Shown: piece by piece, positions 6,529-50,400 of the stretch
Position numbering within the stretch: position 1 is the stretch's first letter
How the letters are laid out: each line of letters starts with the position of its first letter
Notes under the pieces: model-generated
Told to the model about the DNA's origin: nothing
The model's input: the letters and a program-made list of their open reading frames with translations, nothing else
The model's database searches: none
IMG/VR virus record: IMGVR_UViG_3300025133_009608
Span: 62,001-126,000 of that record
Strand: one strand, 5' to 3'
DNA length: 64,000 nt
Translations under genes and position numbers: made by a program

Positions 6529-7013
6529 TAGTCAGAAACTCTCCGAACCGAGGCTCCTGCCTTTCTCATTCCCTTTGACTCATTTGCAAGGCGCTTTAAT
6601 CTAGCCACTCTCAAGTCTTCGCTCTCCTCTTTGGACAGCTCCGGCATAGATTCTATGGCCTCTGCTCTAATTTGCCCTCTAATATCATCTTCGGGAGGCA
6701 GAGCCTCATCTGGGGAGCCCTCCGTTACGCTGGAAGCCGCCTCAGAGTCCTCTGGCGAGGCAGCAGGAGGCTTGGTCGCCTCATCTGTCGGCAAAAAATA
6801 CTCCGAAAGAATAAACAATGACATATCAAATATTATATCCTTCGAAAGGCCGCTTGCAAAGTCTTGATTCTTTATCTTCTCGGATAAAAATGAAAGCCTT
6901 TGCATGTATGCTTCCCCCAAAAGAGCCTGGCCGCAACTTGGGCAGCAATTATTTACCAAAGAATATCGCATTCCATTGGAAACATCAAACCCACACCCTC
7001 TACACTCGATCAT
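6528..7013 (-). CDS. Hypothetical protein with N-terminal Zn ribbon
   Basis: CRGC...CCPSCG; start overlaps the dnaE stop. Confidence 0.6.
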   Translation of the reverse strand: MIECRGCGFDVSNGMRYSLVNNCCPSCGQALLGEAYMQRLSFLSEKIKNQDFASGLSKDIIFDMSLFILSEYFLPTDEATKPPAASPEDSEAASSVTEGSPDEALPPEDDIRGQIRAEAIESMPELSKEESEDLRVARLKRLANESKGMRKAGASVRRVSD

Positions 7014-24816: not shown

Positions 24817-24819
24817 TAA

Positions 24820-25983
24820 TTATCCTATAATCTTTTTCGCTTCAGATAAAAGCTTCTCTTTCATTTTCGATTCAATGCCCTGGCTAGCGATAAACGCCGA
24901 AAACATTTCATAATCATCTTCATGATCTAAGATATCATTATCTCTTATAATTCTTACTATTACCGGCTCTACCGTTACCCTGGAGACGAAAAACGCACCA
25001 GCATCTCTTGCTAGCTTTTGAACGTAAAGCTTATCCGCAGCTGGAAGCACAGACTCTTTTACTGAAACCTTCAGCCTTACAATCTTGTCTTTCATGTCGA
25101 TTTTTGAGACCTCCTCCTCTATCCTGTCCTTGCAGTTGGCAAAGGTTGCATCAGAAATATCAATAACCGAATCGATCAGGTCTCTCGTGGGAACTTTATG
25201 AAAATTTACCTTTTTATTTACCACGTCATAATCGATAAAGTACTTATCGACGTTGGCGTCTCCAAAGTTCGTACGCTCCATAGAGCCTACGTAAATTGAT
25301 GGTGGATTCTTTTTCTTAAGAATTCTAAATGTATGCAAGTGTCCCATCACCGATAGGTCGCATGTCTCAAAGCAATTTGCGTTAACCAGGATCTCCGATC
25401 CGCCATAGTCGTTATAGCTTCCTTCGTAATAAAAGTTATGCCCGACGGCCATTATCGGAGACTTGTTATCCACAGATCTGCACAATTCTCTTACGTGAGC
25501 CTCGTATCCGGCAGACCGCTCTGCGCAGGACTCTCCCGCATACATTCTTTTGTCTCGGTATGGCATTAACAAGATGTTTACTCCCTCATTTTTTGAATTA
25601 AAAAAGGTTACAACCTCTGGCTCTACAATCAGCCTGACATTGGGGTAGTCTTTCGCTGGGAGCGATGTAATTGAACTCGTAAATGAATCCCCGCTCCTTC
25701 TGTAGTCATGGTTTCCCATAATTACAACAGTAGCAATATTCGCTTTAGACAACCTCTTGAGAGCTCGATTTGCTATATCAATATGCTCTGGAGTTGGGTT
25801 TCTGTGCTCAAACAAGTCTCCGGTTTGAATAAAAACATCTACACTTGTATCTATACAGTGATCTATAATATGATTTAGACTCTTCTCGTAATCATCTATC
25901 CTCGTGTTACCGCCGGCGTCCTTTGTTCTTCCAAGGCCAAAGACCGCCCCTATGTGTGAGTCTCCGCAAATAACTACTCTCAT
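24820..25983 (-). CDS. sbcD: SbcD/Mre11 nuclease
   Basis: GDSHIG, TGDLFE, MGNHD, VGH and MGHLH..R, YVGSMERTNFGD; directly upstream of sbcC. Confidence 0.9.
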   Translation of the reverse strand: MRVVICGDSHIGAVFGLGRTKDAGGNTRIDDYEKSLNHIIDHCIDTSVDVFIQTGDLFEHRNPTPEHIDIANRALKRLSKANIATVVIMGNHDYRRSGDSFTSSITSLPAKDYPNVRLIVEPEVVTFFNSKNEGVNILLMPYRDKRMYAGESCAERSAGYEAHVRELCRSVDNKSPIMAVGHNFYYEGSYNDYGGSEILVNANCFETCDLSVMGHLHTFRILKKKNPPSIYVGSMERTNFGDANVDKYFIDYDVVNKKVNFHKVPTRDLIDSVIDISDATFANCKDRIEEEVSKIDMKDKIVRLKVSVKESVLPAADKLYVQKLARDAGAFFVSRVTVEPVIVRIIRDNDILDHEDDYEMFSAFIASQGIESKMKEKLLSEAKKIIG

Positions 25984-35571: not shown

Positions 35572-36108
35572 TTATTTCTCCGTAATCTTTATGTTTGTTG
35601 TATGAGCCGGCTCCGAATGTGGAACTATCAACTCTAGTAATCCATTTTTCATTACCGCCCTTGCCTTGGCGGGGTCAAATGCTGGACTCATAAAAAACTT
35701 TGCCTTAAAACTTCTTCTGGCAATCCCTCTTACGATCATCCCCTGCTGTATTTGTAGGTTTGGATTTTTCGCAGGGTAATCATCCGAAGTCTCGTCGAGA
35801 TCGGCTTCTTCGGCCAAAACTTCGGGCTCCTTCAGTTCAGACCTTACTCCACTACCTGATACAAACAGCTCTCTTCCAGAGGCCTCTATTCGTATATCCT
35901 CTGGGGAATATCCGGCAAGTGCGAAGGCCATATGAAAGCCGTCGGCATCACACCACTGATCTGATTTCGGAAACCTTCCCGAAGTTGACGCCTTCTTAAG
36001 AGAAGAAACCTCTCTATAAAAGGAATCATCGGACCACAATAAGTCCATTATTCTTCCTGGAATGGAAACTCTATTTAACAAGTCCTTCATATTATTGGCT
36101 CCGCTCAT
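35572..36108 (-). CDS. Small heat-shock protein (Hsp20/alpha-crystallin family)
   Basis: FALAGYSPEDIRIE...LFVSG, RGIARRSFK..F, A.MKNGLLELIVP. Confidence 0.85.
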   Translation of the reverse strand: MSGANNMKDLLNRVSIPGRIMDLLWSDDSFYREVSSLKKASTSGRFPKSDQWCDADGFHMAFALAGYSPEDIRIEASGRELFVSGSGVRSELKEPEVLAEEADLDETSDDYPAKNPNLQIQQGMIVRGIARRSFKAKFFMSPAFDPAKARAVMKNGLLELIVPHSEPAHTTNIKITEK

Positions 36109-36403
36109 CTTCAGTCATTAATTCCACGTACTCACTCACGGACATGAGTGCAAATACTACATTTGATATGATCCAACTAAGAAGACTTGTAGAAAATGCA
36201 GCCTCAAAAATTGGAACGCCCACTATGAATGCCGCTATTGCGCCCACCCATACTCCGGAACACATAGGGCATTGAATTAGGTATCCTATCCTTTCTGATT
36301 TTGATCCAATATACTCCCTAACCGGAAGTATTAAGTCACTAATCGTAAGAACGATTGTGAACCCAACTGTCGACAGAAAAAATATTACCCAATCGCTACC
36401 CAT
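36092..36403 (-). CDS. Small membrane protein (DUF1360-like)
   Basis: Hydrophobic helices flanking LIQCPMCSGVWVG. Confidence 0.5.
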   Translation of the reverse strand: MGSDWVIFFLSTVGFTIVLTISDLILPVREYIGSKSERIGYLIQCPMCSGVWVGAIAAFIVGVPIFEAAFSTSLLSWIISNVVFALMSVSEYVELMTEDERSQ

Positions 36404-36423: not shown

Positions 36424-36452
36424 GTTATACTCGAATAACATATAAATATCAA
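36424..36452 (-). promoter_or_regulatory. Sigma-70-type promoter TTGATA-N17-TATAAC
   Basis: Minus strand TTGATA TTTATATGTTATTCGAG TATAAC, about 20 nt upstream of the 36403 start. Confidence 0.55.
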
Positions 36453-37456
36453 TCTATTTTAATATTATGCTCTTCTCCTATGGCCCCTCTCATCTGTTGG
36501 GCGATCCACTGATGTTCTATCTGTGCGTGCGTAGAATCTTTCAAATTAAGATATCCCTTAAAATCATCTATATAAAAGGAAATATATAACTCGGTTATTC
36601 GCCCTTCTGGTAAAATGTATCGAGCAACCTCTCTTAATCTTTTATGTTCATCATTTGATATTATCCCATCTTTTTTTGCAATCCTCGATGACTTCATTAA
36701 TCTAAGGTATTCTTCGAAAACAGCCGCTACTGATGATCGGTATATATCAAGCATTATAGAACTACATGCAGAATCTCCAATAGTATGTCCCATTACCTTT
36801 CCGAATATTTCTGATGTATCATCAAATTTGCTAATAAAATCCTGCGGGACTATTCCGATCCTCTCGCTCGTCATATTTGCAGAACAAGTGCTATGTCCTA
36901 GGATCTGAATGGCTATTGAAAGTGGACACTTTATTCTCCAAGTTGCCCTACTTTGAGATTCAGAGCCAGCATCATGATATGAAACAAGCTCCACTTCCAT
37001 ATTGTGTTCTCCGAGCCTCTCACTTGCGTCAATTTGATTGTCAACTTTTTGCCCAAAAAGATCAAACTTTTCGACCTTTGCAGCAAGGGCTGGCGAATCT
37101 TCGACGAAAAGTTGCCACGCCGAAAGGCTACTATGCCCACCCTTTCTTTCGGATAATAGCGAGGTCTTTGCGAAGTTCCATAGATCCATTGTCATGGTAT
37201 AGACTCCTCCGGTCAGCTCTACTCTTGAAAACTTATTATGCAAGTAGCTATCCATGCCCACCACGGCTTCGTCTCGGCCCCATGAAAACGTCATGGTTAC
37301 GGACTCAAAGGGAGATGTATGAAGATTTTCAATAAGAAAATCAATTACTTCGTCAACCTCGTCGTCTGTTCTTTCTCCCGCCCTTGTCTCACCTGGGACT
37401 GATATCCATGCAGAGTTGGCAACATCTGTCAGATTTCCAGTTATTTTCAAATTCAC
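36449..37456 (-). CDS. ThyX (flavin-dependent thymidylate synthase)-like protein with degenerate active-site motif
   Basis: LHTSPFES, IKCPLSIAIQILGHSTCSANMTSERI (canonical ARQxxRHRxxSxNxxSxRY), EVARYILP and LNLKDSTHAQIE. Confidence 0.75.
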   Translation of the reverse strand: MNLKITGNLTDVANSAWISVPGETRAGERTDDEVDEVIDFLIENLHTSPFESVTMTFSWGRDEAVVGMDSYLHNKFSRVELTGGVYTMTMDLWNFAKTSLLSERKGGHSSLSAWQLFVEDSPALAAKVEKFDLFGQKVDNQIDASERLGEHNMEVELVSYHDAGSESQSRATWRIKCPLSIAIQILGHSTCSANMTSERIGIVPQDFISKFDDTSEIFGKVMGHTIGDSACSSIMLDIYRSSVAAVFEEYLRLMKSSRIAKKDGIISNDEHKRLREVARYILPEGRITELYISFYIDDFKGYLNLKDSTHAQIEHQWIAQQMRGAIGEEHNIKID

Positions 37457-38655
37457 TATTCGCTCTTTGACTTGCAGATCATTGTCAACTTTTTATCGTT
37501 ATCGAATACTATGTTTGCAGCCTCCATTATCGACTCTGGCGTAACCAAAGAAAGAGATGCCATATAGCTCTCGATCGATGGTAGTCCGATCAGCTTCTCT
37601 CTCATTCTGTACTGAGCCATGCCAGAAGCGCTCTCAATCAATCCGTAAGAAGATGCTCTCATTTTATTCTTTGCTCTTTGCAACTCTTCATCAGATATTC
37701 TCGTTGTCTTGATCTTCTCTACCTCGTCTGATATAACTGATAGCATTTCATCTACATTCTCCCCCCGAGTAGACCCGCTAATCAAGGAGAGGGAGCCTCG
37801 CTCCCATTCGTTTAGAGATGAAGATATTCCATAAACAAGTCCTCTTTTTTCTCTTACCTCTGTAAAGAGTCGGCTATCCATCCCTCCTCCGAGAACTGAC
37901 ATTAAAAGCCTAGTCGCCGGAATGTGGTCAGACCCTCGGTTTACTCCGGGGGTTCCTATCCAAACATAGGTATGCTCTAGTCCCGGCCTATTAATCTCGG
38001 CCACTTCGGAGCTAGAATACGAAGAGTCGGCATAATTAAAGCGCCGGGAAACCTTTCCGTTCTCTTTTCCAAAGTGCTTCTCCATAAGAAGATTTGCCTT
38101 TTCCTCGGAAAGATTAGAGCAAAGAGAAACAACCGCATCTCTTTTCTTGCAATATTCCTTGTGAAAGGCATCAACCTCATCTCTAGTAAACTTGCTAATT
38201 GTTTCCTGCGTTCCAATGACTGGCGTGCCGATATAATTGTCAAAAAACTTGTCGGAAAACTTATTCCAGATGTATGAATAATGATTATCTAATCTTGAGA
38301 TTTCCTCTTCCTTCACAACCTCTCTTTCTTTCAAAAACTCATCCTCTGGAAATACCGAATCAAATACTATGTTTGACATTATTTCCATTGCAACATCTAG
38401 ATTTTCGTATGGAACCGTTACGTGATATGCCACAATTTCATGAGAAGTGAAGGCATTTACAGACCCCCCTAAAAAGCCAATTTCCCTTTGAATTTCAAAT
38501 GCAGTTCTTTTGTTCGTACCCTTGAATATGCAATGCTCCAGCATATGTGCTATGCCGGGATTAAAATCCATAGATGACTCCGTTCTAGAGCCAGCATCAA
38601 AGGCTATTACAACCGTTGATAATTTGCTTTCTGTCTTGCTATATGCGTGAATCAT
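37456..38655 (-). CDS. M16 (insulinase/pitrilysin-family) zinc peptidase
   Basis: Inverted Zn motif GIAHMLEHCIFKGT, NAFTS, EREVVKEE, LGGGMDSRLFTEVREKRGLVY. Confidence 0.92.
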   Translation of the reverse strand: MIHAYSKTESKLSTVVIAFDAGSRTESSMDFNPGIAHMLEHCIFKGTNKRTAFEIQREIGFLGGSVNAFTSHEIVAYHVTVPYENLDVAMEIMSNIVFDSVFPEDEFLKEREVVKEEEISRLDNHYSYIWNKFSDKFFDNYIGTPVIGTQETISKFTRDEVDAFHKEYCKKRDAVVSLCSNLSEEKANLLMEKHFGKENGKVSRRFNYADSSYSSSEVAEINRPGLEHTYVWIGTPGVNRGSDHIPATRLLMSVLGGGMDSRLFTEVREKRGLVYGISSSLNEWERGSLSLISGSTRGENVDEMLSVISDEVEKIKTTRISDEELQRAKNKMRASSYGLIESASGMAQYRMREKLIGLPSIESYMASLSLVTPESIMEAANIVFDNDKKLTMICKSKSE

Positions 38656-38702
38656 TTGGTTCCTAAAAAAATGGCGACCAATTAACTGATCGCCATCATA
38701 TC

Positions 38703-39911
38703 TTACTTCTTTTTCTGTTCGATTACTACTTTCTTTCCGTATGGAAACTCAACTCCTCGGTCTTGATCGCAAACCGCCCACAACATTCTATACTTGGGCT
38801 TCTCTGGAAATGCGGCATACCCATCCGTAAAGATGACTAGTCCATCATAGTTCTTTTCCTCTGCAAGCTCCATTACCGGATGAAAACAAGTTCCGCCCCG
38901 ACCTACGATGTCAATCTTAGAAGCCTTTTTGGAGTACTCCTTTGGCTCTCCATAGATCTTGGTATCGAACTGAATGAAGTCGGCCTTTACGTGATCGATC
39001 ATCCCATTCAATTCTGTGGCGAAATATGAAAGTTGCTCGTCTGAAACTGATCCTGATGTATCAAATGCAATCAGAAGTCTACTAGTATAGTTTCTCTTAC
39101 TTCCCGGAGAAGTAACTCCATATCGCCTATTGGGGCGCATTCTTGTGTTCCTTCTCCCCATCATTACAAGCTTGTTGATAAAGTATCTAACTTCCTTCTT
39201 CCAATTGACAACCGGCTTGTTGGCCGCGATAATTTGAGCCGCAAGGTTACCAGAGATATTTCCCCAGCCCTTCTTCTCCTGCTCTTTAATCGCCTTCTCT
39301 GCGATATTTCGAACCTTTTCCTCTACAATGTCGTCTTCAAAATCTTCCCACATAGAGTGGTCATCGACAGTATCCCCCTTGCCTTCGATTACCTTTTCGA
39401 AGTCATTGTCCTCGCCTGCTTCTTTCTTCAGGCTTTCGTAATAAAACTCAGCAGACTCGTTGTTATTAAGATCGAACTGCTTTGGATAAAGCGCCCCGTC
39501 AGGAAGCCCTTCGATGTGACAGTTAATCGCCAAGTCTGCCGCAATATTATATCCACGAAAGTTATATGCAAAATGCTTTGCGCGAGTAAGGTGGTGAAGT
39601 AATACATGCAATGCCTCATGCTTCAATACTCCCCTAAGCTCAGTGGACGAAAGACCTTCGATAAACTCTGGATTATAATATAGCGCCAAGTCTACTCGCC
39701 GAATCACTCCGACCGCCATCGTAGGGATCTTTTTTGATTCGCGCTTATTAAGATGGAGGAATACCTCTCCATATAGTGGCTGAAAACATACAAGTTTTGA
39801 GATTGCAGATTCTAGCTTTGCTTTAATTTGTGAGTTTGCCATGATAATATCCTTTTCGACCTGGTTGGAAGTGTGAGGCATCTGTAACCCATGCCTCCCT
39901 GCGGTTTGCAA
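38703..39911 (-). CDS. Metallopeptidase-like (HExxH) plus VWA domain protein (DUF2201-like); likely start at MANSQIK
   Basis: LKHEALHVLL.H, NIAADLAIN, MIDAS DTSGSVS, GRGGTCF, LVIFTDGY. Confidence 0.8.
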   Translation of the reverse strand: MQTAGRHGLQMPHTSNQVEKDIIMANSQIKAKLESAISKLVCFQPLYGEVFLHLNKRESKKIPTMAVGVIRRVDLALYYNPEFIEGLSSTELRGVLKHEALHVLLHHLTRAKHFAYNFRGYNIAADLAINCHIEGLPDGALYPKQFDLNNNESAEFYYESLKKEAGEDNDFEKVIEGKGDTVDDHSMWEDFEDDIVEEKVRNIAEKAIKEQEKKGWGNISGNLAAQIIAANKPVVNWKKEVRYFINKLVMMGRRNTRMRPNRRYGVTSPGSKRNYTSRLLIAFDTSGSVSDEQLSYFATELNGMIDHVKADFIQFDTKIYGEPKEYSKKASKIDIVGRGGTCFHPVMELAEEKNYDGLVIFTDGYAAFPEKPKYRMLWAVCDQDRGVEFPYGKKVVIEQKKK

Positions 39912-39915
39912 CTAA

Positions 39916-40992
39916 CTAGTTAGTAAGATAGATTTGCTTCAAGTGCTCGCGGAAATCTTCATCTCCCTGCCACTCCATCACAATCTTCTTTGTCTTTGCG
40001 CCGCTAAGTAGCGCAACCCAAGACTGTGATGCAACATCGTTTGGAAGCATCATAAAGAACTCCCGAAGAGCCTCACGTTGCTTTGTCTTGGTCTTAGTAA
40101 GCGAACGACCGTTAACCTCTGCAACTACTGACCTTGCAAGCGCCGCGATAACCTCAATGTCATTGCAAGCACTCTCGATCTTTGGCTTGGTCTTTTCGAA
40201 GTTATCGAGAACATCTTCTGGCCGCAACTGAGAGAATTCATTCTCTACAAACTTCTGGAACATTACGGCGATCTCTCGGCCAAGCCATCCTTTTGCAACT
40301 TGTGTTAGCATTCCATCGTCTTTAGATTCAATGAGGCTCATCCCCATGATCGAATCGCTAAAAGCAACCCAGCTTCGACGCGAAGGATAAATACGGCCCG
40401 CTTCAAGGTTCCCGACTGGTGGGTCTAGAAGGTTTTGGTTTCGATTAATGAACTCAATACAAGTTGCATGAACCCCTTCTTCTCGCGCCCAGTCAAGCCA
40501 CTCTGTTGCAGATGGATCAAAGTCAACGTGAAACCATCGATCATGAAGTGCGGGATCTAGCTCGACCACATCATATTCATCGTCAGAGTTTACAGCCGCG
40601 ACTACTCGCCAGCCATCGGGAAGCTTTTGTCCATCCAATCGTCTGTCCAAGCAAATCTCAAAGACGGCTTGCAAGACATCTTTGGATGCCCGATTAAGCT
40701 CATCAAAAAACAGGATTCCGTGACTATCGGGATCTGTTGGCCACCACTCTTGCTTTAGAAAGCGAGTAACTCCATTTTCCGCGTCAAGGTGTGGCATACC
40801 TTTAATGTCACCAACCTCGCACTGAGAGAGGCGAACGTCCCAAAAGCCATAATCATTTCCACTCTCAGCGGAAAGCTCGTCGGCAGTTTGACGTACAACG
40901 CTGGACTTTCCAACCCCATGTTTTGCATGGAGCATAATGGACTTATCCGATGGCATTGTCTTTAGAACAGACTTTGTTTGTGCAATATTCAT
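39916..40992 (-). CDS. MoxR-like AAA+ ATPase
   Basis: HGVGKS, LFFDELNRA, VVAAVN, LDPALHDRW, PSRRSW; adjacent to the VWA gene. Confidence 0.85.
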   Translation of the reverse strand: MNIAQTKSVLKTMPSDKSIMLHAKHGVGKSSVVRQTADELSAESGNDYGFWDVRLSQCEVGDIKGMPHLDAENGVTRFLKQEWWPTDPDSHGILFFDELNRASKDVLQAVFEICLDRRLDGQKLPDGWRVVAAVNSDDEYDVVELDPALHDRWFHVDFDPSATEWLDWAREEGVHATCIEFINRNQNLLDPPVGNLEAGRIYPSRRSWVAFSDSIMGMSLIESKDDGMLTQVAKGWLGREIAVMFQKFVENEFSQLRPEDVLDNFEKTKPKIESACNDIEVIAALARSVVAEVNGRSLTKTKTKQREALREFFMMLPNDVASQSWVALLSGAKTKKIVMEWQGDEDFREHLKQIYLTN

Positions 40993-41440: not shown

Positions 41441-42511
41441 TTACTTTCTAGTTCCGTAGGCATGAGACTCTGCGAGCCCCGCGTTTGTTATCTTCATAAA
41501 AGAAGCGTTTTCTCTCAGCTCGCTAATAGTCACTGCATTCGCATAACTCATTCCAGATCGAAGCCCTCCCATGAATTCGTCAAGAATATATTTAGCCTTG
41601 CCTTTCACCGGGATATGTGTCGACACTCCCTCGGCGCAAGTCCCCGGCTTCAGCCCTCCTCTTTTATCTTCTTGAATCTCTCTACTTGCAGCGCCACGAT
41701 AGACCTTCATTTTTCTTCCGTCTATATTCACAATGTCACCGGGAGACTCTATCGTTCCAGCAAAAAGCCCTCCAGCCATGATTGCATCGGCTCCAGCTAC
41801 TATGCTCTTAATCATATCTGACGGATACCTTATCCCTCCATCTGCAATTATAGATACATCTTTATAAGATGTATTTTCGGCCCTTGCTCTTTGGCAATCA
41901 ACAATTGTTGATAGCAATGGAACTCCAAACCCCGTCATTATCCGCGTTGAGCAAATCGCTCCAGACCCGATTGACGCCCTAACCGCATTGGCCCCCGCAT
42001 CTGCCAAGTAAGCAAACCCATCGCCGGTTGCTACATTCCCGGCCATTATTTGGTAATTAGAATTATCTTTAATAAACTCAATCATTTCCTTCATCAGTAT
42101 TGAGTGACCATTTGCAATATCAATAGCAACCCAATCAATTATCGAGCCTATTTCATTTTTTAGCGACAAGAACCTTTCTCGACCCTCTCTTCCCACTCCA
42201 ACTGCCGCTACAACTGGGGCTTCATCGGAATGCTCTGATACTTGCCTCAGTGAGGCAATCTGCTCCCCCGTAGAACTAAACCTATGAACAACCCCCATTG
42301 CCCCATGAGAGCCAAGCTCAGAGGCCATTAACGGCCCCGTAACAGTATCCATAGGAGAGGATATCATTGGAACCTCCAACTTGGTGTTTCCAATGAAAGT
42401 TGCAGTGTCAGGAGAGAGTCTGGATCTCACTTCTGAATATGTCGGAACAAGCAAAACATCATCAAATGATAGTCCAGCATTCCAGATAAAGGAGTTCTTT
42501 GAGTTACTCAT
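41441..42511 (-). CDS. IMPDH/GMP-reductase family enzyme without CBS domains, leaning GMP reductase
   Basis: [31 protein letters not shown], catalytic [40 protein letters not shown]; no Arg-Tyr flap dyad seen. Confidence 0.85.
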
Positions 42512-43150
42512 CTAATTCCTATTTGAATAAAAGTTTTGGAATTCTCTAGCGAATTCTTCAGATTTGCCATAAAATCGAAGATTGAGGCAAAACTTATCGA
42601 ACAGGTAGTGTGAAGCCTCATGTGCGATTAGCAGCTCATTATTTCTAGAGCCCCTGTCCGTTAGGAATATCGCCGACTGATTTGGATCAGATGGAATCCC
42701 ATCGTAAAGTCCAAAAAGATTGAACGCCGCCAAATTTCCAACCCCAGCAGAAGATCCCCACTGGTTAAACCTATTGTGATCGTTCAACACATTAGATGAT
42801 ACATGGTATATATCAAGGCTCAAATTCGGCCTACACTCAACTATTCTTACGCCTCTCCTCTCAAGGAATACCACATATTCTGCTATAGTTCTTTGTAAAA
42901 CATTATTCAACAATGTTGATGAGAACGCCCCAGAAGATGCGTAACTCTGACTCTGATGATATAAAGAGTACCTGACTGAGTGGCTTCTGGTCGCCACAGA
43001 GTGATTTCCAGATGAAACAAAGTTTATATCAGAGGTTCCTCGATATGGAAACGCCTCAGAGCCTCCGGGGGCCAGCAATATTAGGGAGATTAATAATCCT
43101 TTAAGTATTTTGCTCATCCGTTTCTCTCCTGTTGTCGCGACGTTTTCCAC
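42512..43150 (-). CDS. Exported protein with HExxH metalloprotease-like motif (likely start MSKILKG)
   Basis: Signal-peptide-like MSKILKGLLISLILLAPGGSEA; LIAHEASHY. Confidence 0.55.
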   Translation of the reverse strand: MENVATTGEKRMSKILKGLLISLILLAPGGSEAFPYRGTSDINFVSSGNHSVATRSHSVRYSLYHQSQSYASSGAFSSTLLNNVLQRTIAEYVVFLERRGVRIVECRPNLSLDIYHVSSNVLNDHNRFNQWGSSAGVGNLAAFNLFGLYDGIPSDPNQSAIFLTDRGSRNNELLIAHEASHYLFDKFCLNLRFYGKSEEFAREFQNFYSNRN

Positions 43151-43301
43151 GGAGAATTTGAACCTCTAAGTCTGGGTTCAAGTCAATCATTCCAACATGA
43201 TTTCTTGGAACCCCGCGATGTTCCCAGTGTGTTTTTGTCACCTTGTTGTATACTTTAATGTTTAAAGTATTTCTTTCATTTCTGCGTCGGTTATCTACCA
43301 T
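43101..43301 (-). CDS. Small hypothetical protein
   Basis: 66-aa co-oriented ORF. Confidence 0.4.
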   Translation of the reverse strand: MVDNRRRNERNTLNIKVYNKVTKTHWEHRGVPRNHVGMIDLNPDLEVQILRGKRRDNRRETDEQNT

Positions 43302-43308
43302 GATCTTC

Positions 43309-44283
43309 CTATTCTAGTTCTTCGATTATTTTATTTAGCCGTCGTGAAAGATTGGGATGCTGAGAAGCCGCAGGGATCAGCCATGGAAGGTTGTTTTTTG
43401 AAAAAACTCCCATTAGACCCTCTACTACTTCGTAGTCTCCCGTATCCACAAAAAGCATAAGCCGCTGCTCAATTTTGGCAATCTCTTTCTTGTTATCATT
43501 TAAGATAATAAGCTGGGCAGGATTTAGGTCGCGCTCCTTTGTCCAATATCCAAATGGATATCTAAGCTGATTCACTCTGGCTACAAAGTTATTAATGAGG
43601 GTTCTTTTCATTGTCTTTGTTCCCCTCTTTGCAACATGAGCCAGTATGTCGGGCGAAACAGCGTTTCTGTCAGACGCTTTTCTGATAATAGAATTCCTTT
43701 CCGAAACGGCGCCTTTCTTTCTGCTTATCCTGTTCCATAGATAATTATAGAAACTAGGATCTTCAGAAGTACTGCTCCCAACGGACTCCCACATGCGATA
43801 TGTTCGAACACTCTGATCTGTCAGGCCATGCCTTGAGATCTCTGAAAGATAATCAAAATCAGTTATTGACCTTGAAATCTCCGCTCTAAGCCGATTTGAT
43901 TCGATCTCAAGATCGACTGAGATGGAGTTATAAATTTTATTGATAATGAATGCTTTTACACTTGGAGTTAACCCTGGAATGTCATCTGAGTTACATCTCA
44001 ATACCTGAGACAAGAGTGCGTCCCTTGCTTCAGGGAGCTGCTCCCACAGGTAGGTGAAGTTTTCTCCGGTCAAAATCTTGAACTCCCCGGAGTTATAATA
44101 ATAACTCCGAGAACAGTCCGCCGTTACTGCCGACTTAACTGCCAACTCATAAAAGGCCTCATCTGGAGTCCAGTTTGAGTGTAGCGAAATTAAATTTAAA
44201 ATATCAACTCTTGAATTTTCTTTTGCCTCTTCCATCTTTACTCTCCCGAGTCCAATCGTGCTTGAAGTCTTTTTGCTATCCAC
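43309..44283 (-). CDS. Helical-repeat (HEAT-like) family protein A
   Basis: C-terminal EQRLMLFVDTGDYEVVEGL...LPWLI similar to the 53606 gene. Confidence 0.55.
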   Translation of the reverse strand: MDSKKTSSTIGLGRVKMEEAKENSRVDILNLISLHSNWTPDEAFYELAVKSAVTADCSRSYYYNSGEFKILTGENFTYLWEQLPEARDALLSQVLRCNSDDIPGLTPSVKAFIINKIYNSISVDLEIESNRLRAEISRSITDFDYLSEISRHGLTDQSVRTYRMWESVGSSTSEDPSFYNYLWNRISRKKGAVSERNSIIRKASDRNAVSPDILAHVAKRGTKTMKRTLINNFVARVNQLRYPFGYWTKERDLNPAQLIILNDNKKEIAKIEQRLMLFVDTGDYEVVEGLMGVFSKNNLPWLIPAASQHPNLSRRLNKIIEELE

Positions 44284-45008
44284 TTGTTTTTCATATTCCT
44301 ATTGCCAAGAAGCATAGGGATGCTGGAAATATTTATCTTGTCTATAAGAACCGAGAATACCGCTCCAGATATTTCTTTTGTCATTTTTGACAACCTTGAG
44401 TATCCCATTGGAGCCAAGTGAACCGCCTGTACTCTAATGTCTTTTGTTTTATCATCTAGCATTTCATCCAGACACTCTACCGTTCCAAGCCTTGAGAACA
44501 CAACCTCTCTTATCTTTGCATCCTTACTTCTCCTTAGCTGCCTCAAGGTATCAATAGTGCAGTATTGAGCCGCAAATAACTGCGCTGGGCCATTAAGATT
44601 TAGGGCGACATCATTTAGGATCGATATATCTTCATATGAAGATGAACGCAGAAGAGATTCAATCATAGTGCCGTAGTTAAAGCTATATCTGCCGGATGAT
44701 GTTTCTGCCTCATTCTCTATTGCCATCTTGATGACTCTGGAGCCAAGTCTCGGATTTGATTTGGCGATAGCCGCGAAAGCCATCTTCGAATACCAATCAT
44801 TTTGTCCCGAAAGAAATGCCCTAGAAAACAACTCTTCGCTTGAAAGAATCTGAAGAAGCGCCTCCTCTTCTGTTTCTGAAAAGATAAAATTTGTCTTCGA
44901 ATAACTTCCAGACCTATAGTTGGCCTCTATGAGCTTTATTCCATTATTTATCTTATCGATTGTGTCGTTTATTTGTTCCGTCATCATATTCAACTCCAAT
45001 AAATTCAT
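44238..45008 (-). CDS. Helical-repeat (HEAT-like) family protein B
   Basis: RSKDAKIR...SRLGTVECLDEMLDDKTKDIR, similar to the 59446 gene. Confidence 0.6.
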   Translation of the reverse strand: MNLLELNMMTEQINDTIDKINNGIKLIEANYRSGSYSKTNFIFSETEEEALLQILSSEELFSRAFLSGQNDWYSKMAFAAIAKSNPRLGSRVIKMAIENEAETSSGRYSFNYGTMIESLLRSSSYEDISILNDVALNLNGPAQLFAAQYCTIDTLRQLRRSKDAKIREVVFSRLGTVECLDEMLDDKTKDIRVQAVHLAPMGYSRLSKMTKEISGAVFSVLIDKINISSIPMLLGNRNMKNKWIAKRLQARLDSGE

Positions 45009-45822
45009 CTATATTATCAACTCTAAATCCTGCGGCCGACCGATGCCCCCCGCCTCCAAAGCTTGAGGCAATCTCTGAAACATCAATTCCATTCTCTCTC
45101 GATCTCAAAGAAACCCTAAACCCGCTTCCATCGAAATAATAAGCCGCCGCAAATGGGCTCCCCTCTGAAAGTTGACCTGCTATTTCCGACTGGAAAAAAG
45201 ATATATTTATAGCCGGAACTTCATAGCCAGCAATATTCATCTTAAAAGAATTCTTAATTAGGCTAGCTATTAGGACATCTTTATACCTTAGAATTCCCCT
45301 TCCGGTACTCACCACCTTTGAATGAGCAGGAGAGTCGCTATCCAATAGAGAGATATGCAGGTCATCCCATGCCTCAAATGTCTTTGGATAAGAATCAATT
45401 GTGGAAAGTATTTCTCTTGAGAAGTCCAACTTCCAATTCCACAAGTCTCTATCTTCAACATGCAGAACGATCGGAGGGACGTTATCTTCTCCGAAAAGAT
45501 ACTTCCAAGAAAGATATGCTCCGGAGTGACTCATGTCAAACTCACAGAAATCCAAATCCCCCAGCTCTTTCTCCGCCGTAATATGATGGTCTATAACGAC
45601 CAATGATTTTGCGGCATCCTTCATCTTCAACAATGTAAGCCGATTATAGGAAAAATCCACAATATATACGGTCTTGCCCTCTATCGGTGGAGGTGGCTCT
45701 CCGTGCTTTGCCGGAATGTACTTGGCTTTATCCCCATACTTTTTCCAAAATGCGAAGGCAGAGCAAAACCCGTCTGGACAATTTGCATGATATAATACAA
45801 CTATATTTTTTTCTTCTTCCAC
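44953..45822 (-). CDS. DHH/DHHA1-family phosphoesterase
   Basis: YHANCPDG, YIVDFS, VIDHH, VEDRDLW, SLRS, GGGGHRSAAGF. Confidence 0.88.
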   Translation of the reverse strand: MEEEKNIVVLYHANCPDGFCSAFAFWKKYGDKAKYIPAKHGEPPPPIEGKTVYIVDFSYNRLTLLKMKDAAKSLVVIDHHITAEKELGDLDFCEFDMSHSGAYLSWKYLFGEDNVPPIVLHVEDRDLWNWKLDFSREILSTIDSYPKTFEAWDDLHISLLDSDSPAHSKVVSTGRGILRYKDVLIASLIKNSFKMNIAGYEVPAINISFFQSEIAGQLSEGSPFAAAYYFDGSGFRVSLRSRENGIDVSEIASSFGGGGHRSAAGFRVDNIDEFIGVEYDDGTNKRHNR

Positions 45823-46842
45823 TTAAATAACCTCTGGAGAGTATGAAAACAATACTTCCTTTACATTAGAGGTATTTTCCTCCAGCTTCCTTTCTATAAA
45901 TACTTTCATCTTAGCCAAGTTTAAAAACTCAATAATAGAATCATTATGGAACAACTTAAACACATTGAATTCTTCAAGTATATCGCACTTGCTTATTACA
46001 AGATGAGTCGTTCCGGTAACTTCTGCGGCATAAATTAGATTATCTAAATTCATCCAATTTACTTTCCTTCTTCTCCCGGTTGTAACTCCATATTCTTTCC
46101 CCAACTCCCCAAGCTCTGATAGCTCCGGATCATCAAGAAGGGACGCCGGGAATCTTGGATCTTCTCCTGAGCGGGTATCGTAAATTTTCGAACACCCCCA
46201 TATCTCATTAATCTTTTGAGGGGCGAATCCCAAACTGCAAGCTGCATAAGGAAGCGTTTCGCTGGAAGTTACATATGGATATAACCCATGATTTACATCA
46301 AGATAAAATCCCTGAGCACCTTCGCATAAAATGTTTCCGGAAAGTCTGCCATTCCAAATTATAGATGAATCCAAAGTTCCGTCTGCAAGTATCCCCGTTC
46401 TTGCATACTTAGAGGCATAAGCCGGAGCAATTCCTTTTGATGTTGTTCCCAACTTTGCCGCAAGGTTCTTTTTATCAAAAGCAATATGTTCGTCTGTAAC
46501 GATATGACAATTTGGATGAACCTTTACCAGAGAGGTATCAAATCCATTTTGATTTAAATAATCGATCTCTTTATAAAAAGACTCCGGATGCAGAACGCAC
46601 CCCGGCCCGATAAGGGATGTTATTCCATGGAAAACTCCGGACGGGATGAGGTGGGTTTGATACTTTTTCCCATCAAGAAATACAGTGTGTCCTGCGTTGT
46701 TTCCTCCGGCCCATCTTGCAACCATATTATAATAACTTGATCCATCAGGGCTCTTCTTTTTTGAAAGGGCAGAGGAGATTTTCCCTTTACCCTCGTCCCC
46801 CCAGCAAAGCCCAACTGCTATATCAACCGAATTAACTGTCAT
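45823..46842 (-). CDS. purA: Adenylosuccinate synthetase (short form)
   Basis: WGDEGKGK, GGNNAGHT, HLIPSG, GTTSKGIAPAY, EGAQG, YPYVTSS, GVTTGRRR. Confidence 0.93.
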   Translation of the reverse strand: MTVNSVDIAVGLCWGDEGKGKISSALSKKKSPDGSSYYNMVARWAGGNNAGHTVFLDGKKYQTHLIPSGVFHGITSLIGPGCVLHPESFYKEIDYLNQNGFDTSLVKVHPNCHIVTDEHIAFDKKNLAAKLGTTSKGIAPAYASKYARTGILADGTLDSSIIWNGRLSGNILCEGAQGFYLDVNHGLYPYVTSSETLPYAACSLGFAPQKINEIWGCSKIYDTRSGEDPRFPASLLDDPELSELGELGKEYGVTTGRRRKVNWMNLDNLIYAAEVTGTTHLVISKCDILEEFNVFKLFHNDSIIEFLNLAKMKVFIERKLEENTSNVKEVLFSYSPEVI

Positions 46843-47481: not shown

Positions 47482-50400
47482 CTATCGGAGACGTCTGGCG
47501 AGATTAGTCTCTCCCAAGCCGTTTAATATGGCCGCGATGATACATGTGTTTGCTATCTTACCAAGAGTCTCTGTCCGGTCCGGGATGGGCGAATATTCGC
47601 CATTAGTTGTGGAAAAAAAATAGACCCCAAACCTTCCAAGGAGATAGTTTCCAAGCAGATCCCTGGCCGCTTGGACATATTCTGTAGGCTCGGGCGAGTT
47701 GTCTAATAAAACCTTTTTTAATCCTCCCCCGTCATTCCGAAACGCTCTTCCAGATAGATCGACGGAAGTGTTCGGGCTACTTATAGAATAAATATCACCG
47801 GGACCATTTCCTGTTTGATTGGAAATTAGATTACTGATGGTCCTGGTAGTAATCAACTCATTTACTTTGGCCTGAATTTCGGCCCCTTGATTCTGGCTAG
47901 CACGCGCAGCCGCTTGCTGCTGAGTCGGGGCGTTCGTGGGGGTTCTGCCGCTGAGTCCTGAAATGGATGTGCCAGCACCATTAGCAGCAGCAGCAGTATC
48001 CATATCCATAATCATTTTCTTTATATCGTTTTTAATTGCAGTATTCTCCATCCAAAGATCGACGAACCTTACGGTGCCTCCCGCGCTTCTCTTATATCTT
48101 CCAAATACATACATTCCATAAGGTTCTTCTCCATGCTTACTCCATAGGGAATCAAGATGGGAGCTGAGATTCGCGCTTCCAATTGCGTCCTTTGCCGACT
48201 CCCAAGCGTTATTTAATGCCGAATAACTGGGCAAGTTATCCGGCCACTCTTGGTCGCGGCTCCCAAAGAAGTTTCTAATAATATCGTCAGTTACACTCGC
48301 TTCCCTTTGGGTGTTCTCGACGGATGCATAAGGATCAAGTCGCACCCCACTAGCCTGCTGTGATTCGCTCATTTGATCAATGGTACTTTTCAGGCGAGAA
48401 AGAGCTGCTTCCGGACCGGATGAGGATTCCCAAGACTCAGCGTAACTTGCATCATTCCTCATTCTTGTAAAAAAAGGATCATGGGAAGCTGGAACGTATC
48501 CAGGATTGTTTTTAAAAGAATCATGAGCCGCTACCCAAAAATTATACCAAGCCGTCTGTGTATTTGAACCCCAATCATCGTCGATATTACCGGTGTAGTA
48601 TCGACCGGTTTGTAGTTCTGTTTGTATCTTTCCAATATTGCCGTTTGCGGCGGTTTGCCGTGGCTGCGGCGAATAATTAGGAAAGGGATTTACATTTCCG
48701 TTTGCTGAGGCGCCACCTGAGCCGCCTCTGGGGCCACCTCCTCTGGAGGCTCCAGCGGGTGGGGATTGACCGATGGGTTGCGCCGTCTTATCTAATGAAT
48801 CCTTTTTTTTTGATCTGCTCGATATTGCCCTTAGGGCCACATGATCATCTGCAAACGACTCCAGCATCCATGTAGCAGCGGACCCTGCTTTTGATAGCCA
48901 CCTTCCATTCATCTTAATCCAGAGTTTTCCTTCGTCGCTGGCATCGTCAATCGGCCCCGTTTGATCAGCATCAATATCGTCCTTCCAGGTATAATCTCTC
49001 AAAGGAATAACTATGCCCCTGCTTTGACGAGCTTGGGCTATGGTGTTGAGCGAGCGGAAAAAAAGCACTCTAGTATTTTCCGAATCAAATACGTGGTGGG
49101 CTCCACTATCATAGACTATGTGCGACACCATTTCTGGGTTTAGAATAAAGGGAGATTCGTCAAGATTTCCTTCGACTATTTCAAAATTGGTATCGCCCAC
49201 GGTTTTTGTATTATTTGCCCGGCTGGTGACTGCGACTGGAGCATAACCTCTATCATAAGCAGACTTGAGAGCTTCCAGGGTGTCCTTAGCACCTGCGTAG
49301 TAAGGAGCAGACTGACTCCCCGGATTAGTGCCGGTCCCGAATAAAAAATCGTTTAATTCAGTAACATCGTCATCCGAGCCCCCATGAGCAAGGTCTTGTG
49401 TTTGTTGCTCGAAGCTCTGTCTAAATAATGGAAAGGTGGATAAACTGCCGCGATTGTAGGCTCTTTTTATGCTCCTTATTATTACATCAAAAGTTGTTGC
49501 GTCCGTACTCTGAAATAGGTTGTCGTCGTCCTCTTTGATTGCAAGTCTCGCCGCGTCAAGAAAGCTGCCCATGGCACTGAAAATAGGATCACCTGTTGCC
49601 ATCTTTCTAATCATATTTGATCGAAGTAATGAAAGTCTCTCCAGCCGAGCATTATGGATATCATAAGCATGGCGCAACCCTTCGGCCGCAGCACGCGCAT
49701 CGTTGTAGAAAGGAGCAGATTGACGCCCCGGATTATTGCCGGTCCTGAATAAAAAATCGTTTAATTCAGTAACATCGTCATCCGAGCCCCCTTGAGCAAG
49801 GCCTTGTGTTTGTTGCTCGAAGCTCTGTTTAAATAATGGAAAGGTGGATAAATTGCCGCGATTGTACCGATCTAATAATACACGCTCAATTGATTCAAAG
49901 GCCGTGAAGTCACGGCCCTGAAATAGGTTGTCGTCGTCCTCGTTAATTGCTCTTTTTGTTGCCGCCAAAAAAGCCCGCATGGCAGGCCGAATAGTGTCAG
50001 GAGTATTCTTCTCCGGTTTGGCGGCCAAGTCATCAGGGGTATTCTGCGGAGCCTGCACAGGACCATGGAGGTCGCCCGTATAGGCCATCTTTCTAATCAT
50101 ATTTGATTGAGCGGCATACCCGGAGTTATTTAAAGCCAAAGCTAATTTCTTTAATTCATTATTCATTTTACTTTCCCTTGATGTAACAACCCTTGATTCA
50201 TCGCCGAAGCCCAGCCACGAAAAGAAGTCTTTCTCAGATTTATCTTTATTATTAGTAGGATTTCCAAGAACATTATACTCGGAAGTTCCGGAATCTTTTC
50301 TTTGAATATTAACGGGAGGTTGATCCTCCGGCAAATCCATTGGCGATGACTTTCCGAAGCCCGAAGAATCCGAAGCCTCTTGATCGCCATCTCCATAATT

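What the first reader, a model, noticed from the sequence alone, without database searches (positions are those of the whole stretch)
36449..37456. Intact ThyX-fold ORF with the FAD/dUMP-binding arginines replaced: dead or repurposed enzyme
Seen: the canonical ARQxxRHRxxSxNxxSxRY reads AIQILGHSTCSANMTSERI, NARS reads YIDD, and LNLR reads LNLK. HxSPFE, ARYILP and HAQxE are retained and the 335-aa frame is unbroken. Established: those arginines bind the FAD phosphates and dUMP in Thermotoga ThyX. Inference: loss of thymidylate synthase activity with possible new function, such as a different pyrimidine modification or a dominant-negative subunit for host ThyX tetramers.
Basis: partly seen in the sequence, partly recalled or inferred. 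Interest (0 to 1): 0.6.

Follow-up and report, generated by a model that had tools for sequence, protein, structure and literature searches.

The report
Inactivated ThyX kept by selection
A marine jumbo phage carries a flavin-dependent thymidylate synthase (ThyX) gene that has lost key catalytic residues, yet selection has kept the gene intact in two diverged phage lineages, so it is probably a non-catalytic "pseudoenzyme" and not a decaying gene.

Summary
The 335-aa ORF at 36449-37456(-) is real and has a ThyX fold (Pfam Thy1 E=8e-17; structure match to T. maritima ThyX).

It belongs to an uncharacterised long-form ThyX subfamily of 310-360 aa with a ~110-aa insert. This subfamily is a syntenic core gene of uncultured marine jumbo phages.

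- **Active-site motif:** 105 of 109 members keep RHRxxSxNxxSxRY and the LR arginine, and two more change only the central His. Only the window's lineage and one sister lineage have lost them.
- **Timing of the loss:** the two degenerate lineages form one clade (support 100/99). They share derived codon states, so the loss predates their split.
- **Rate since the loss:** the gene has evolved faster than its neighbours (59% aa identity against 84-96% for five annotated neighbours).
- **Selection:** dN/dS is still about 0.21, and 0.22 within the sister lineage. The frame is open in both lineages at dS of about 1.3.
- **Other thymidylate genes:** the genome has no ThyA, no second ThyX and no thymidine kinase.

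Best reading: the protein no longer works as a thymidylate synthase but is retained, probably as a homo-oligomer with a non-catalytic role. The phage then depends on host dTMP. The retained role is unknown.

The parts
36449..37456 (-). Long-form ThyX-like ORF, 335 aa, GTG start (P0001)
37304..37321 (-). HTSPFE (residues 46-51). H46 corresponds to T. maritima H53. The motif is retained here and in the sister degenerate lineage.
   Evidence: role of H53 from PMC11940539
36950..37276 (-). Family-specific insert of about 110 aa (residues 61-169), lying between two strands that both align to ThyX beta3. It contains the invariant DLxNF.
36848..36913 (-). Degenerate ThyX motif AIQILGHSTCSANMTSERIGIV (residues 182-203). 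Changes are R187G, R189S, G198E, Y200I and T202I. S197 and R199 are retained.
36644..36646 (-). H271. This position is Tyr in all other family members. His (CAT) is shared with the sister degenerate lineage.
36599..36634 (-). REVARYILPEGR (residues 275-286). R279 corresponds to T. maritima R147 and is retained. LPEGR is invariant in the family and lies in the predicted dimer interface.
36563..36574 (-). YIDD (residues 295-298), at the position of the canonical NARS. The change is family-wide and not a private loss.
36539..36550 (-). LNLK (residues 303-306). K306 replaces the invariant Arg that corresponds to T. maritima R174.
   Evidence: role of R174 from PMC8316439
36512..36529 (-). HAQIEH (residues 310-315), retained
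37456..38655 (-). Upstream M16 peptidase gene. Its TAG stop overlaps the ThyX GTG start by 1 nt. In the close relatives (L015-L025) the same 1-nt overlap is annotated, and M16 lies immediately upstream of ThyX in the whole clade.

Best explanation
The ORF is the local copy of a long-form ThyX. This is a subfamily of flavin-dependent thymidylate synthase with a ~110-aa insert, and it is a syntenic core gene of an uncultured clade of marine jumbo phages.

In the common ancestor of the window's phage and one sister lineage, three kinds of residue were replaced:
- the arginines that hold FAD and stabilise the reduced flavin (T. maritima R78 and R80 equivalents);
- the tyrosine lid and acid catalyst (Y91 equivalent);
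- the arginine that activates dUMP (R174 equivalent).

The protein therefore no longer makes dTMP, or makes it only at trace level, and the phage depends on the host for thymidylate. The gene was not discarded. It still encodes a folded ThyX-like protein, probably a homo-oligomer, that is under purifying selection. It is therefore a pseudoenzyme kept for a non-catalytic role, such as a structural, scaffolding or ligand- or partner-binding role.

Shown here: fold, family, which residues are lost, when they were lost, rate acceleration, purifying selection, and absence of another thymidylate synthase in the genome.

Inferred: loss of activity. The retained role is not known.
For: **Family and fold**
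- establish the family and the fold.
- 105 of 109 members keep RHR..S..N..S.RY and the LR arginine, and two more change only the central His. The window's lineage (P0001, P0002) and the P0004 lineage do not.
- Against the other 102 members, the window's protein has lost 8 of 78 columns conserved at 90% or more. P0004 has lost 29 and the intact sister P0003 has lost 1. Seven of the window's 8 lost positions are also lost in P0004.
- NCBIfam thyX equivalog cut-off is 87.9 bits. P0003 scores 92.1, P0001 56.8 and P0004 23.4.

**Published roles of the lost residues**
- The RHR motif binds the FAD phosphates and ribityl, and its first Arg contacts the isoalloxazine and dUMP (PMC6514825).
- R78 stabilises FADH- and a Y91 mutation slows catalysis 100-1000-fold (PMC11940539).
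- R174 activates dUMP (PMC8316439).

**Timing of the loss**
- The tree is (P0003,(P0001,(P0004,P0110))) with support 100/99. From the shared node, the paths are 0.27 to P0003, 0.65 to P0001 and 0.98 to P0004.
- The window and the sister-lineage locus L018 share derived codon states: position 189 AGC to GGC, 202 ATA to ATG, 187 and 201 GGA to GAG, 271 CAT in both, and 20 GCC/GTC against GGA.

**Rate acceleration**
- Tajima relative-rate tests give 42-45 against 16-23 unique changes for P0001 versus P0003 with near outgroups (p = 0.014 to 0.0002).
- Window versus L018: ThyX is 59% identical, while its annotated neighbours M16, DUF2201, AAA_5, IMPDH-like and PurA-like are 84-96% identical. In pairs of phages with intact ThyX, ThyX is as conserved as M16 or more so.

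**Retention by selection**
- Window versus L018: dN/dS is 0.21 for ThyX and 0.01-0.06 for neighbouring enzymes.
- Within the P0004 lineage, dN/dS is 0.22. The split of 10 synonymous to 12 non-synonymous changes has P = 0.0105 under neutrality.
- Under neutral evolution at 0.65 substitutions per site, the chance of no stop codon is about 1e-14.

**Oligomer**
- Homodimer prediction scored 0.71, with the best of 3 controls at 0.00. This mark was reached by 20 of 30 proteins solved as pairs of one chain and 1 of 23 solved as single chains. The runs agree in at least 59% of contacts and the partner pLDDT is at least 76. The interface includes the invariant LPEGR.

**Genome context**
- The 94%-complete, 316.7-kb genome has no ThyA, thymidine kinase, thymidylate kinase or second Thy1 hit.
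Against: - No biochemical data exist for any member of the long-form family, so even the intact members are only presumed thymidylate synthases.
- The family as a whole lacks the R165 equivalent, which reviews describe as a conserved FAD ligand. Its cofactor binding may therefore be unusual.
- The window's copy keeps the equivalents of H53, Q75, H79, S88, R90, R147 and H178, and has a conservative R174K. Residual or altered activity cannot be excluded.
- dS between the two lineages (about 1.3) is near saturation, so that dN/dS estimate is approximate. The unsaturated within-lineage estimate rests on only 22 differences.
- The dimer pass may reflect the model's memory of solved ThyX tetramers.
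- No partner, ligand or expression data were found.
Confidence: 0.6

Rival explanations
1. Weakened but still active thymidylate synthase. The window's copy retains enough of the active site (S197, R199, R279, H46, Q184, K306) to make dTMP slowly, and only the sister lineage is truly dead.
For: - The window's protein has lost only 8 of 78 conserved columns, against 29 in P0004.
- The Ser88, Arg90 and Arg147 equivalents are retained.
- It is the only thymidylate-synthase-like gene in the genome.
Against: - Four residues that are invariant in the family and have documented roles are replaced together: the R78, R80, Y91 and R174 equivalents.
- Shared derived codons place the RHR loss before the split from a lineage that then lost nearly all remaining catalytic residues. 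That pattern is expected if activity was already gone.
- The protein scores 56.8 bits against the 87.9-bit equivalog cut-off.
- Its rate is significantly accelerated relative to the intact sister.
Confidence: 0.14
2. Neofunctionalised enzyme. The altered pocket catalyses a different reaction, for example another pyrimidine modification or the use of another cofactor.
For: - Purifying selection persists.
- HTSPFE, QxEH and LPEGR are retained in both degenerate lineages.
- ThyX-fold enzymes with other substrates exist, such as the PolB UMP/dUMP methylase, which appears among the structural matches.
Against: - The former active-site loop (residues 187-203) has little in common between the two lineages. 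Only four positions match (T190, S192, M195 and R199). This is not what a newly selected catalytic site would show.
- The sister lineage also lost the R147, S88, N85 and H178 equivalents.
- No ThyA-type hydroxymethylase was found in the genome.
- The genome encodes a dUTPase, which argues against uracil-containing DNA.
Confidence: 0.1
3. Dominant-negative or inhibitory subunit that co-assembles with the host's ThyX and poisons its active sites, which are shared between subunits.
For: - ThyX active sites are built from three subunits (PMC6514825).
- The oligomer interface appears to be retained.
- Many marine bacteria use ThyX (general knowledge; not tested here).
Against: - The protein has a ~110-aa insert and only about 20-24% identity to bacterial ThyX. 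Mixed tetramers are therefore unlikely.
- The phage has no thymidylate synthase of its own and keeps a dUTPase. Blocking host dTMP synthesis would starve its own replication.
- The host is unknown.
Confidence: 0.05
4. Pseudogene in neutral decay that has simply not yet been broken.
For: - The substitutions are confined to one small clade.
- The gene is among the fastest-evolving in its neighbourhood.
Against: - dN/dS is about 0.21 between lineages and 0.22 within the sister lineage, with P = 0.0105 against neutrality.
- Both lineages keep an open frame of nearly equal length (335 and 337 aa) at dS of about 1.3. The neutral chance of having no stop is about 1e-14 per lineage.
- 70 of 78 conserved columns are still intact.
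Confidence: 0.03

Closest known systems
Canonical flavin-dependent thymidylate synthase ThyX/FDTS (T. maritima TM0449, PDB 1O26; PBCV-1 A674R, PDB 2CFA)
   Same: - Same fold (Foldseek probability 1.0; VIA-align Z about 14 over residues 150-335).
- Pfam Thy1 domain.
- Retained equivalents of H53, Q75, H79, S88, R90, R147 and H178.
- Predicted self-association.
   Different: - A ~110-aa insert follows the HTSPFE strand.
- The R78, R80, Y91 and R174 equivalents are replaced.
- The R74 and R165 equivalents are absent across the whole family.
- The score is below the NCBIfam equivalog cut-off.
Intact long-form ThyX of related marine jumbo phages (e.g. P0003, and the copies in L003-L014)
   Same: - Same length class, same insert and the same invariant motifs (HTSPFE, DLxNF, TWRxxCPLS, LPEGR, FYxDDF, QxEH).
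- Same gene order: AAA_5, DUF2201, M16, ThyX, small ORF, HSP20, KH.
   Different: Those copies keep RHRxxSxNxxSxRY, Y271 and the LR arginine, and they evolve more slowly. None has been characterised experimentally. No cultured phage in the INPHARED collection encodes the long form.
Atypical ThyX of Corynebacterium glutamicum (PDB 3FNN/3GE9), described by its depositors as not required for thymidylate biosynthesis
   Same: A ThyX-fold protein that is not needed for dTMP supply in its organism. It is the top VIA-align match (Z 14.6).
   Different: That organism has ThyA as a back-up. Here no other thymidylate synthase is encoded, and the catalytic motif itself is degenerate. I know that case only from the entry titles and did not read it.
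PolB UMP/dUMP C5-methylase of polyoxin biosynthesis (PDB 4P5A)
   Same: A ThyX-fold protein with a changed function. Structural match Z 13.2.
   Different: PolB is an active flavin enzyme. Here the flavin-binding arginines are gone, and the two degenerate lineages show no common new pocket.

Membership tests
ThyX / FDTS (Pfam PF02511, NCBIfam TIGR02170) | Thy1 domain and fold | tested here: met
   - Pfam: 62.1 bits against a cut-off of 24.8.
- Foldseek: probability 1.0.
- VIA-align: Z 14, rmsd 2.4-3.5 A, 155-169 residues aligned.
ThyX / FDTS (Pfam PF02511, NCBIfam TIGR02170) | ThyX motif RHRxxSxNxxSxRY | tested here: not met
   The motif reads GHSTCSANMTSERI. Both Arg of RHR and the Tyr are replaced, while Ser and the last Arg are kept.
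ThyX / FDTS (Pfam PF02511, NCBIfam TIGR02170) | dUMP-activating arginine (T. maritima R174) in LxLR | tested here: not met
   K306. Arg is invariant in the other 102 full-length members examined.
ThyX / FDTS (Pfam PF02511, NCBIfam TIGR02170) | Equivalents of H53 (HxxPFE), R147 (REVAR) and H178/Q180 (HAQxE) | tested here: met
   H46, R279, H310 and Q312 are retained.
ThyX / FDTS (Pfam PF02511, NCBIfam TIGR02170) | Score above the curated equivalog cut-off | tested here: not met
   TIGR02170 scores 56.8 bits against a cut-off of 87.9. The intact sister P0003 scores 92.1.
ThyX / FDTS (Pfam PF02511, NCBIfam TIGR02170) | FAD binding and dUMP-to-dTMP activity | not testable with these tools
   This needs thyA complementation, measurement of flavin content and an enzyme assay.
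ThyX / FDTS (Pfam PF02511, NCBIfam TIGR02170) | Homo-oligomer (tetramer) | tested here: inconclusive
   Only a dimer could be modelled. It scored 0.71 against a best control of 0.00. The mark was reached by 20 of 30 solved pairs and 1 of 23 single chains. The pass may come from the model's memory of solved ThyX complexes.
Long-form ThyX subfamily of marine jumbo phages (defined here) | A ~110-aa insert with DLxNF; TWRxxCPLS; LPEGR; FYxDDF; length 310-360 aa | tested here: met
   All are present. 108 relatives were found at E <= 1e-38.
Long-form ThyX subfamily of marine jumbo phages (defined here) | Conserved gene order: M16 peptidase, ThyX, small ORF, HSP20, KH | tested here: met
   The same order is seen in L003-L014, L015, L018 and L023-L025.
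Pseudoenzyme (catalytically dead homologue kept by selection) | Loss of residues needed for catalysis, together with purifying selection on the remainder | tested here: met
   Residue loss. dN/dS of 0.21-0.22 and open frames in two lineages. The actual loss of activity is inferred, not measured.

The most novel reading that the evidence does not exclude
This would be the first ThyX-derived pseudoenzyme. The protein would have lost thymidylate synthesis in an ancestor of two marine jumbo-phage lineages and then been kept for a new non-catalytic job. That job could be a scaffold or regulator in phage nucleotide metabolism, or a binder of a host factor.

The protein sits in a previously undescribed long-form ThyX family whose insert may be a degenerate partial duplication of the ThyX core.
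Probability: 0.4. Interest if true: 0.55.

Novelty: new variant of a known kind. Interest (0 to 1): 0.45.

Why it matters
ThyX is usually read in phage genomes as a straightforward auxiliary gene for dTMP supply.

This case shows that annotation by domain alone can be wrong. A jumbo phage carries a ThyX that almost certainly cannot make dTMP, has no other thymidylate synthase, and still pays to keep the protein.

If the retained role can be found, it would add a second function to the ThyX fold. It would also give a natural "before and after" series for studying how an enzyme becomes a pseudoenzyme: intact P0003, partly degenerate window copy, and heavily degenerate sister.

The result also flags a large, uncharacterised long-form ThyX family in uncultured marine jumbo phages.

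Tried and rejected
**Searches that found little**
- tblastn of the ORF against 50,697 phage records found nothing at 1e-5. With the intact sister as query, only canonical short ThyX matched the C-terminal half, at 28-32% identity. No cultured phage in that collection has the long form.
- A single-protein scan of IMG/VR found nothing. The profile scan found 12 loci.
- A metagenome scan with a profile of the degenerate clade found only the window's own contig and one distant relative. No further degenerate lineages turned up.
- The closest copies differ from the window by a single codon (V20A), so no dN/dS could be computed within the window's own lineage.
- DNA for the intact sister P0003 could not be fetched.

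**Ideas rejected**
- I first took the neighbouring 339-aa adenylosuccinate-synthetase-like gene for PurZ, the marker of Z-genome phages. It keeps GDEGKGK, scores 260 bits on PurA and 105 bits on PurZ (cut-off 300), and is far closer to solved PurA than to solved PurZ.
- Uracil-containing DNA as the reason for giving up thymidylate synthesis is disfavoured, because the genome encodes a dUTPase.
- Internal duplication as the origin of the insert is unproven. hhalign puts the insert in the expected register against the C-terminal core, but without significance (E = 0.22). The structural matches are weak (Z 3.6-5.3), although the top five of 48,161 chains are all ThyX-fold proteins.

**Not available or not run**
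- No RNA run holds the locus, so there is no expression evidence.
- The large representative-protein search was not run, because the word search had already given more than 100 relatives.

Full report
**1. The observation**

The window holds an uninterrupted 335-codon frame at 36449-37456 on the minus strand. It has a GTG start, and that start overlaps the TAG stop of the upstream M16 peptidase gene by one base.

The ThyX assignment is secure:
- Pfam Thy1 gives E=8.1e-17.
- The AlphaFold2 model has mean pLDDT 84.
- Foldseek matches T. maritima ThyX with probability 1.0.
- VIA-align gives Z of about 14.

The sequence recurs on independent assemblies with at most one amino-acid difference. Three marine metagenome runs hold 89-100% of its sampled words, though two of them may be the source sample.

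**2. The family**

A word-based protein search found 108 relatives at 37-59% identity (plus one at 99%). Nearly all are 300-360 aa, and many lie on contigs of 50-420 kb.

All relatives share a ~110-aa insert between the HTSPFE strand and the helix that carries the ThyX motif. The strands on both sides of the insert align to the same beta-strand of T. maritima ThyX.

The window lies in a 316,664-bp IMG/VR virus record estimated to be 94% complete.

In twelve IMG/VR loci and in the closest metagenomic contigs, the gene sits in the same block:
- PurA-like
- DHH/DHHA1
- IMPDH/GMP-reductase-like
- AAA_5
- DUF2201
- M16 peptidase
- ThyX
- a small ORF
- HSP20
- KH

The long-form ThyX is therefore a core gene of an uncultured marine jumbo-phage clade. 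No cultured phage in the INPHARED collection encodes it.

**3. Which substitutions are special**

Of the 109 family sequences, 105 keep RHRxxSxNxxSxRY, the Arg of REVAR and the Arg of LxLR. Two more change only the central His.

- ARQ is AVQ/ATQ in intact members.
- NARS is FYLDDF in intact members. T. thermophilus ThyX has QDLHN at this place.

Compared with the other 102 members, the window protein has lost 8 of the 78 columns that are at least 90% conserved: R10T, T20V, R187G, R189S, Y200I, T202I, Y271H and R306K.

By alignment to T. maritima ThyX, R187, R189, Y200 and R306 correspond to R78, R80, Y91 and R174. Published work gives these residues the following roles:
- The RHR motif binds the FAD phosphates and ribityl. 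Its first Arg also contacts the isoalloxazine and dUMP (PMC6514825).
- R78 stabilises the reduced flavin, and mutation of Y91 slows the reaction 100-1000-fold (PMC11940539 and PMC8316439).
- R174 activates dUMP as a nucleophile (PMC8316439).

The NCBIfam thyX equivalog model has a cut-off of 87.9 bits. The intact sister P0003 scores 92.1, the window protein 56.8 and the second degenerate lineage P0004 23.4.

**4. When the loss happened**

A maximum-likelihood tree places the two degenerate lineages together, as sister to the intact P0003, with support 100/99. From the shared node, the path is 0.27 to P0003, 0.65 to the window protein and 0.98 to P0004.

Seven of the window's eight lost positions are also lost in P0004. 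At several of these the codons show shared derived states:

| Position | Window lineage | Sister lineage |
|---|---|---|
| 189 | AGC (Ser) | GGC (Gly) |
| 202 | ATA (Ile) | ATG (Met) |
| 187 and 201 | GGA (Gly) | GAG (Glu) |
| 271 | CAT (His) | CAT (His) |
| 20 | GCC/GTC | GGA |

The simplest reading is that the RHR arginines and Y271 were already replaced in the common ancestor.

**5. Decay or retention**

The sister-lineage phage (L018) is syntenic with the window, which allows a gene-by-gene control.
- ThyX is 59% identical, while its annotated neighbours M16, DUF2201, AAA_5, IMPDH-like and PurA-like are 84-96% identical.
- In pairs of phages with intact ThyX, ThyX is as conserved as M16 or more so. 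One example is 60% against 46%.
- Tajima relative-rate tests confirm the acceleration. The window protein has 42-45 unique changes against 16-23 in P0003 with near outgroups (p = 0.014 to 0.0002). The tests are not significant with two distant outgroups. P0004 is faster still.

Selection has nevertheless not lapsed.
- dN/dS between the two lineages is 0.21, against 0.01-0.06 for the neighbouring enzymes, and is similar in all parts of the protein.
- Within the sister lineage, where dS is only 0.06, dN/dS is 0.22. The 10 synonymous and 12 non-synonymous changes have P = 0.0105 under neutrality.
- About 4.9% of single-base changes in this gene would create a stop codon. At 0.65 substitutions per site, the chance of an open frame under neutrality is about 1e-14.
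- The two proteins differ in length by only two residues.

**6. Structure and assembly**

Residues 150-335 superpose on almost the whole ThyX chain.

The insert, modelled alone (pLDDT 84), has no strong match. Its five best hits among 48,161 chains are all ThyX-fold proteins (Z 3.6-5.3). This hints at a degenerate partial duplication of the core, but the profile comparison is not significant (E = 0.22).

A two-copy complex prediction gave these results:
- Score 0.71, with the best of three controls at 0.00.
- This mark was reached by 20 of 30 proteins solved as pairs of one chain and by 1 of 23 solved as single chains.
- The runs agree in at least 59% of contacts, and the partner pLDDT is at least 76.
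- The interface includes the family-invariant LPEGR, which both degenerate lineages retain.

The pass may owe something to solved ThyX tetramers. It supports self-association but does not prove it.

**7. Thymidylate supply in the genome**

| Gene or family | Window genome | Complete 395-kb relative |
|---|---|---|
| ThyA-type enzyme | absent | absent |
| Second Thy1 hit | absent | not tested |
| Thymidine kinase | absent | absent |
| Thymidylate kinase | absent | absent |
| SHMT | absent | absent |
| Ribonucleotide reductase | present | present |
| dUTPase-family gene | present | present |
| ComEB-type dCMP deaminase | absent | present |

A phage that keeps a dUTPase is unlikely to build uracil-containing DNA. 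With its own ThyX disabled, it must draw dTMP from the host.

**8. Explanation**

The best-supported account has three parts:
- A thymidylate synthase was inactivated in an ancestor of two lineages.
- Constraint has been relaxed roughly four-fold since then.
- The folded protein, probably still an oligomer, has been kept for a role that does not need the flavin and dUMP chemistry.

I put this at 0.6. The rivals are:
- **Weak residual synthase activity in the window copy** (0.14).
- **A new catalytic function** (0.10). This is disfavoured because the former active-site loop has little in common between the two lineages, with only four matching positions (T190, S192, M195 and R199).
- **A poison subunit for host ThyX** (0.05).
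- **Neutral decay** (0.03), which is contradicted by the selection data.

**9. Comparison with the known, and limits**

The protein has the ThyX fold but fails the family's defining motif and the curated equivalog threshold. I file it as a ThyX-derived pseudoenzyme within a new long-form subfamily, not as a thymidylate synthase.

Searches of the open-access paper library found no paper that combines ThyX with pseudoenzyme, and nothing on a long-form ThyX in jumbo phages.

The limits are these:
- No member of the long-form family has been assayed.
- The whole family lacks the R165 equivalent, which reviews call a conserved FAD ligand.
- dS between the lineages is near saturation.
- The host is unknown.
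- No expression data exist.

Noticed in passing
window 41441-46842 (-): A purine-interconversion cluster is conserved across the phage clade. It contains a short (339-aa) PurA-type adenylosuccinate synthetase (45823-46842; GDEGKGK intact; PurA 260 bits, PurZ 105 bits against a cut-off of 300), a DHH/DHHA1 phosphoesterase (44953-45822) and an IMPDH/GMP-reductase-like protein (41441-42511). A GMP-reductase-like gene together with PurA would allow conversion of GMP to AMP. That would suit this AT-rich (about 43% GC) genome.
   Followed up: partly
window 2668-4314 (-) and 54808-56409 (-): Two separate full-length GroEL-type chaperonin genes (548 and 533 aa; PHROG 5725, E = 1e-127 and 1e-152) lie within one 64-kb window of a phage genome.
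   Followed up: no
window 7010-10270 (-): The replicative polymerase is of the DnaE (Pol III alpha) type. Its best matches, at about 33% identity, are metagenomic phage contigs from faecal samples and Streptomyces phages. SbcC-like, SbcD-like and UvsX-like genes lie nearby (21289-25983 and 1488-2654).
   Followed up: partly
window 10726-17376 (-): A 2216-aa ORF has no PHROG match at 1e-5. ORFs of 1052 aa (47482-50640) and 450 aa (17386-18738) are also unmatched.
   Followed up: no
window 36950-37276 (-), residues 61-169 of the ThyX-like protein: The family-specific insert may be a degenerate partial duplication of the ThyX core.
- Modelled alone, its five best structural matches among 48,161 chains are all ThyX-fold proteins (Z 3.6-5.3).
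- Its invariant DLxNFxK resembles the SLxNFLxLR helix of ThyX.
- The profile comparison is not significant (E = 0.22).
   Followed up: partly
window 37456-40992 (-): A MoxR-like AAA_5 ATPase, a DUF2201 protein (metallopeptidase-like plus VWA-like domains) and an M16 peptidase with an intact HxxEH motif (HMLEH) form a block immediately upstream of ThyX in every related locus. In the window and its closest relatives the M16 stop overlaps the ThyX start by 1 nt.
   Followed up: partly
window 36092-36403 (-): A 103-aa hydrophobic ORF with a CPMC motif lies directly downstream of ThyX. It is conserved in position in most of the related loci.
   Followed up: no
window 57879-59363 (+): This is the only long ORF on the plus strand (494 aa, no PHROG match). 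GC skew goes to 0.00 and AT skew turns positive in the 58-60 kb bin, so the ORF looks like an inverted or inserted module.
   Followed up: no
G000:C1:138100-139200 (L027), compared with G001:C1:84400-85600 (L028): The complete 395-kb relative with an intact ThyX has a 204-aa ComEB-type dCMP deaminase (Pfam 69 bits). The window's genome has only a weak 120-aa deaminase-like ORF, below the cut-off. Loss of a dUMP-supplying enzyme may have accompanied loss of ThyX activity, but the two genomes are distant.
   Followed up: partly
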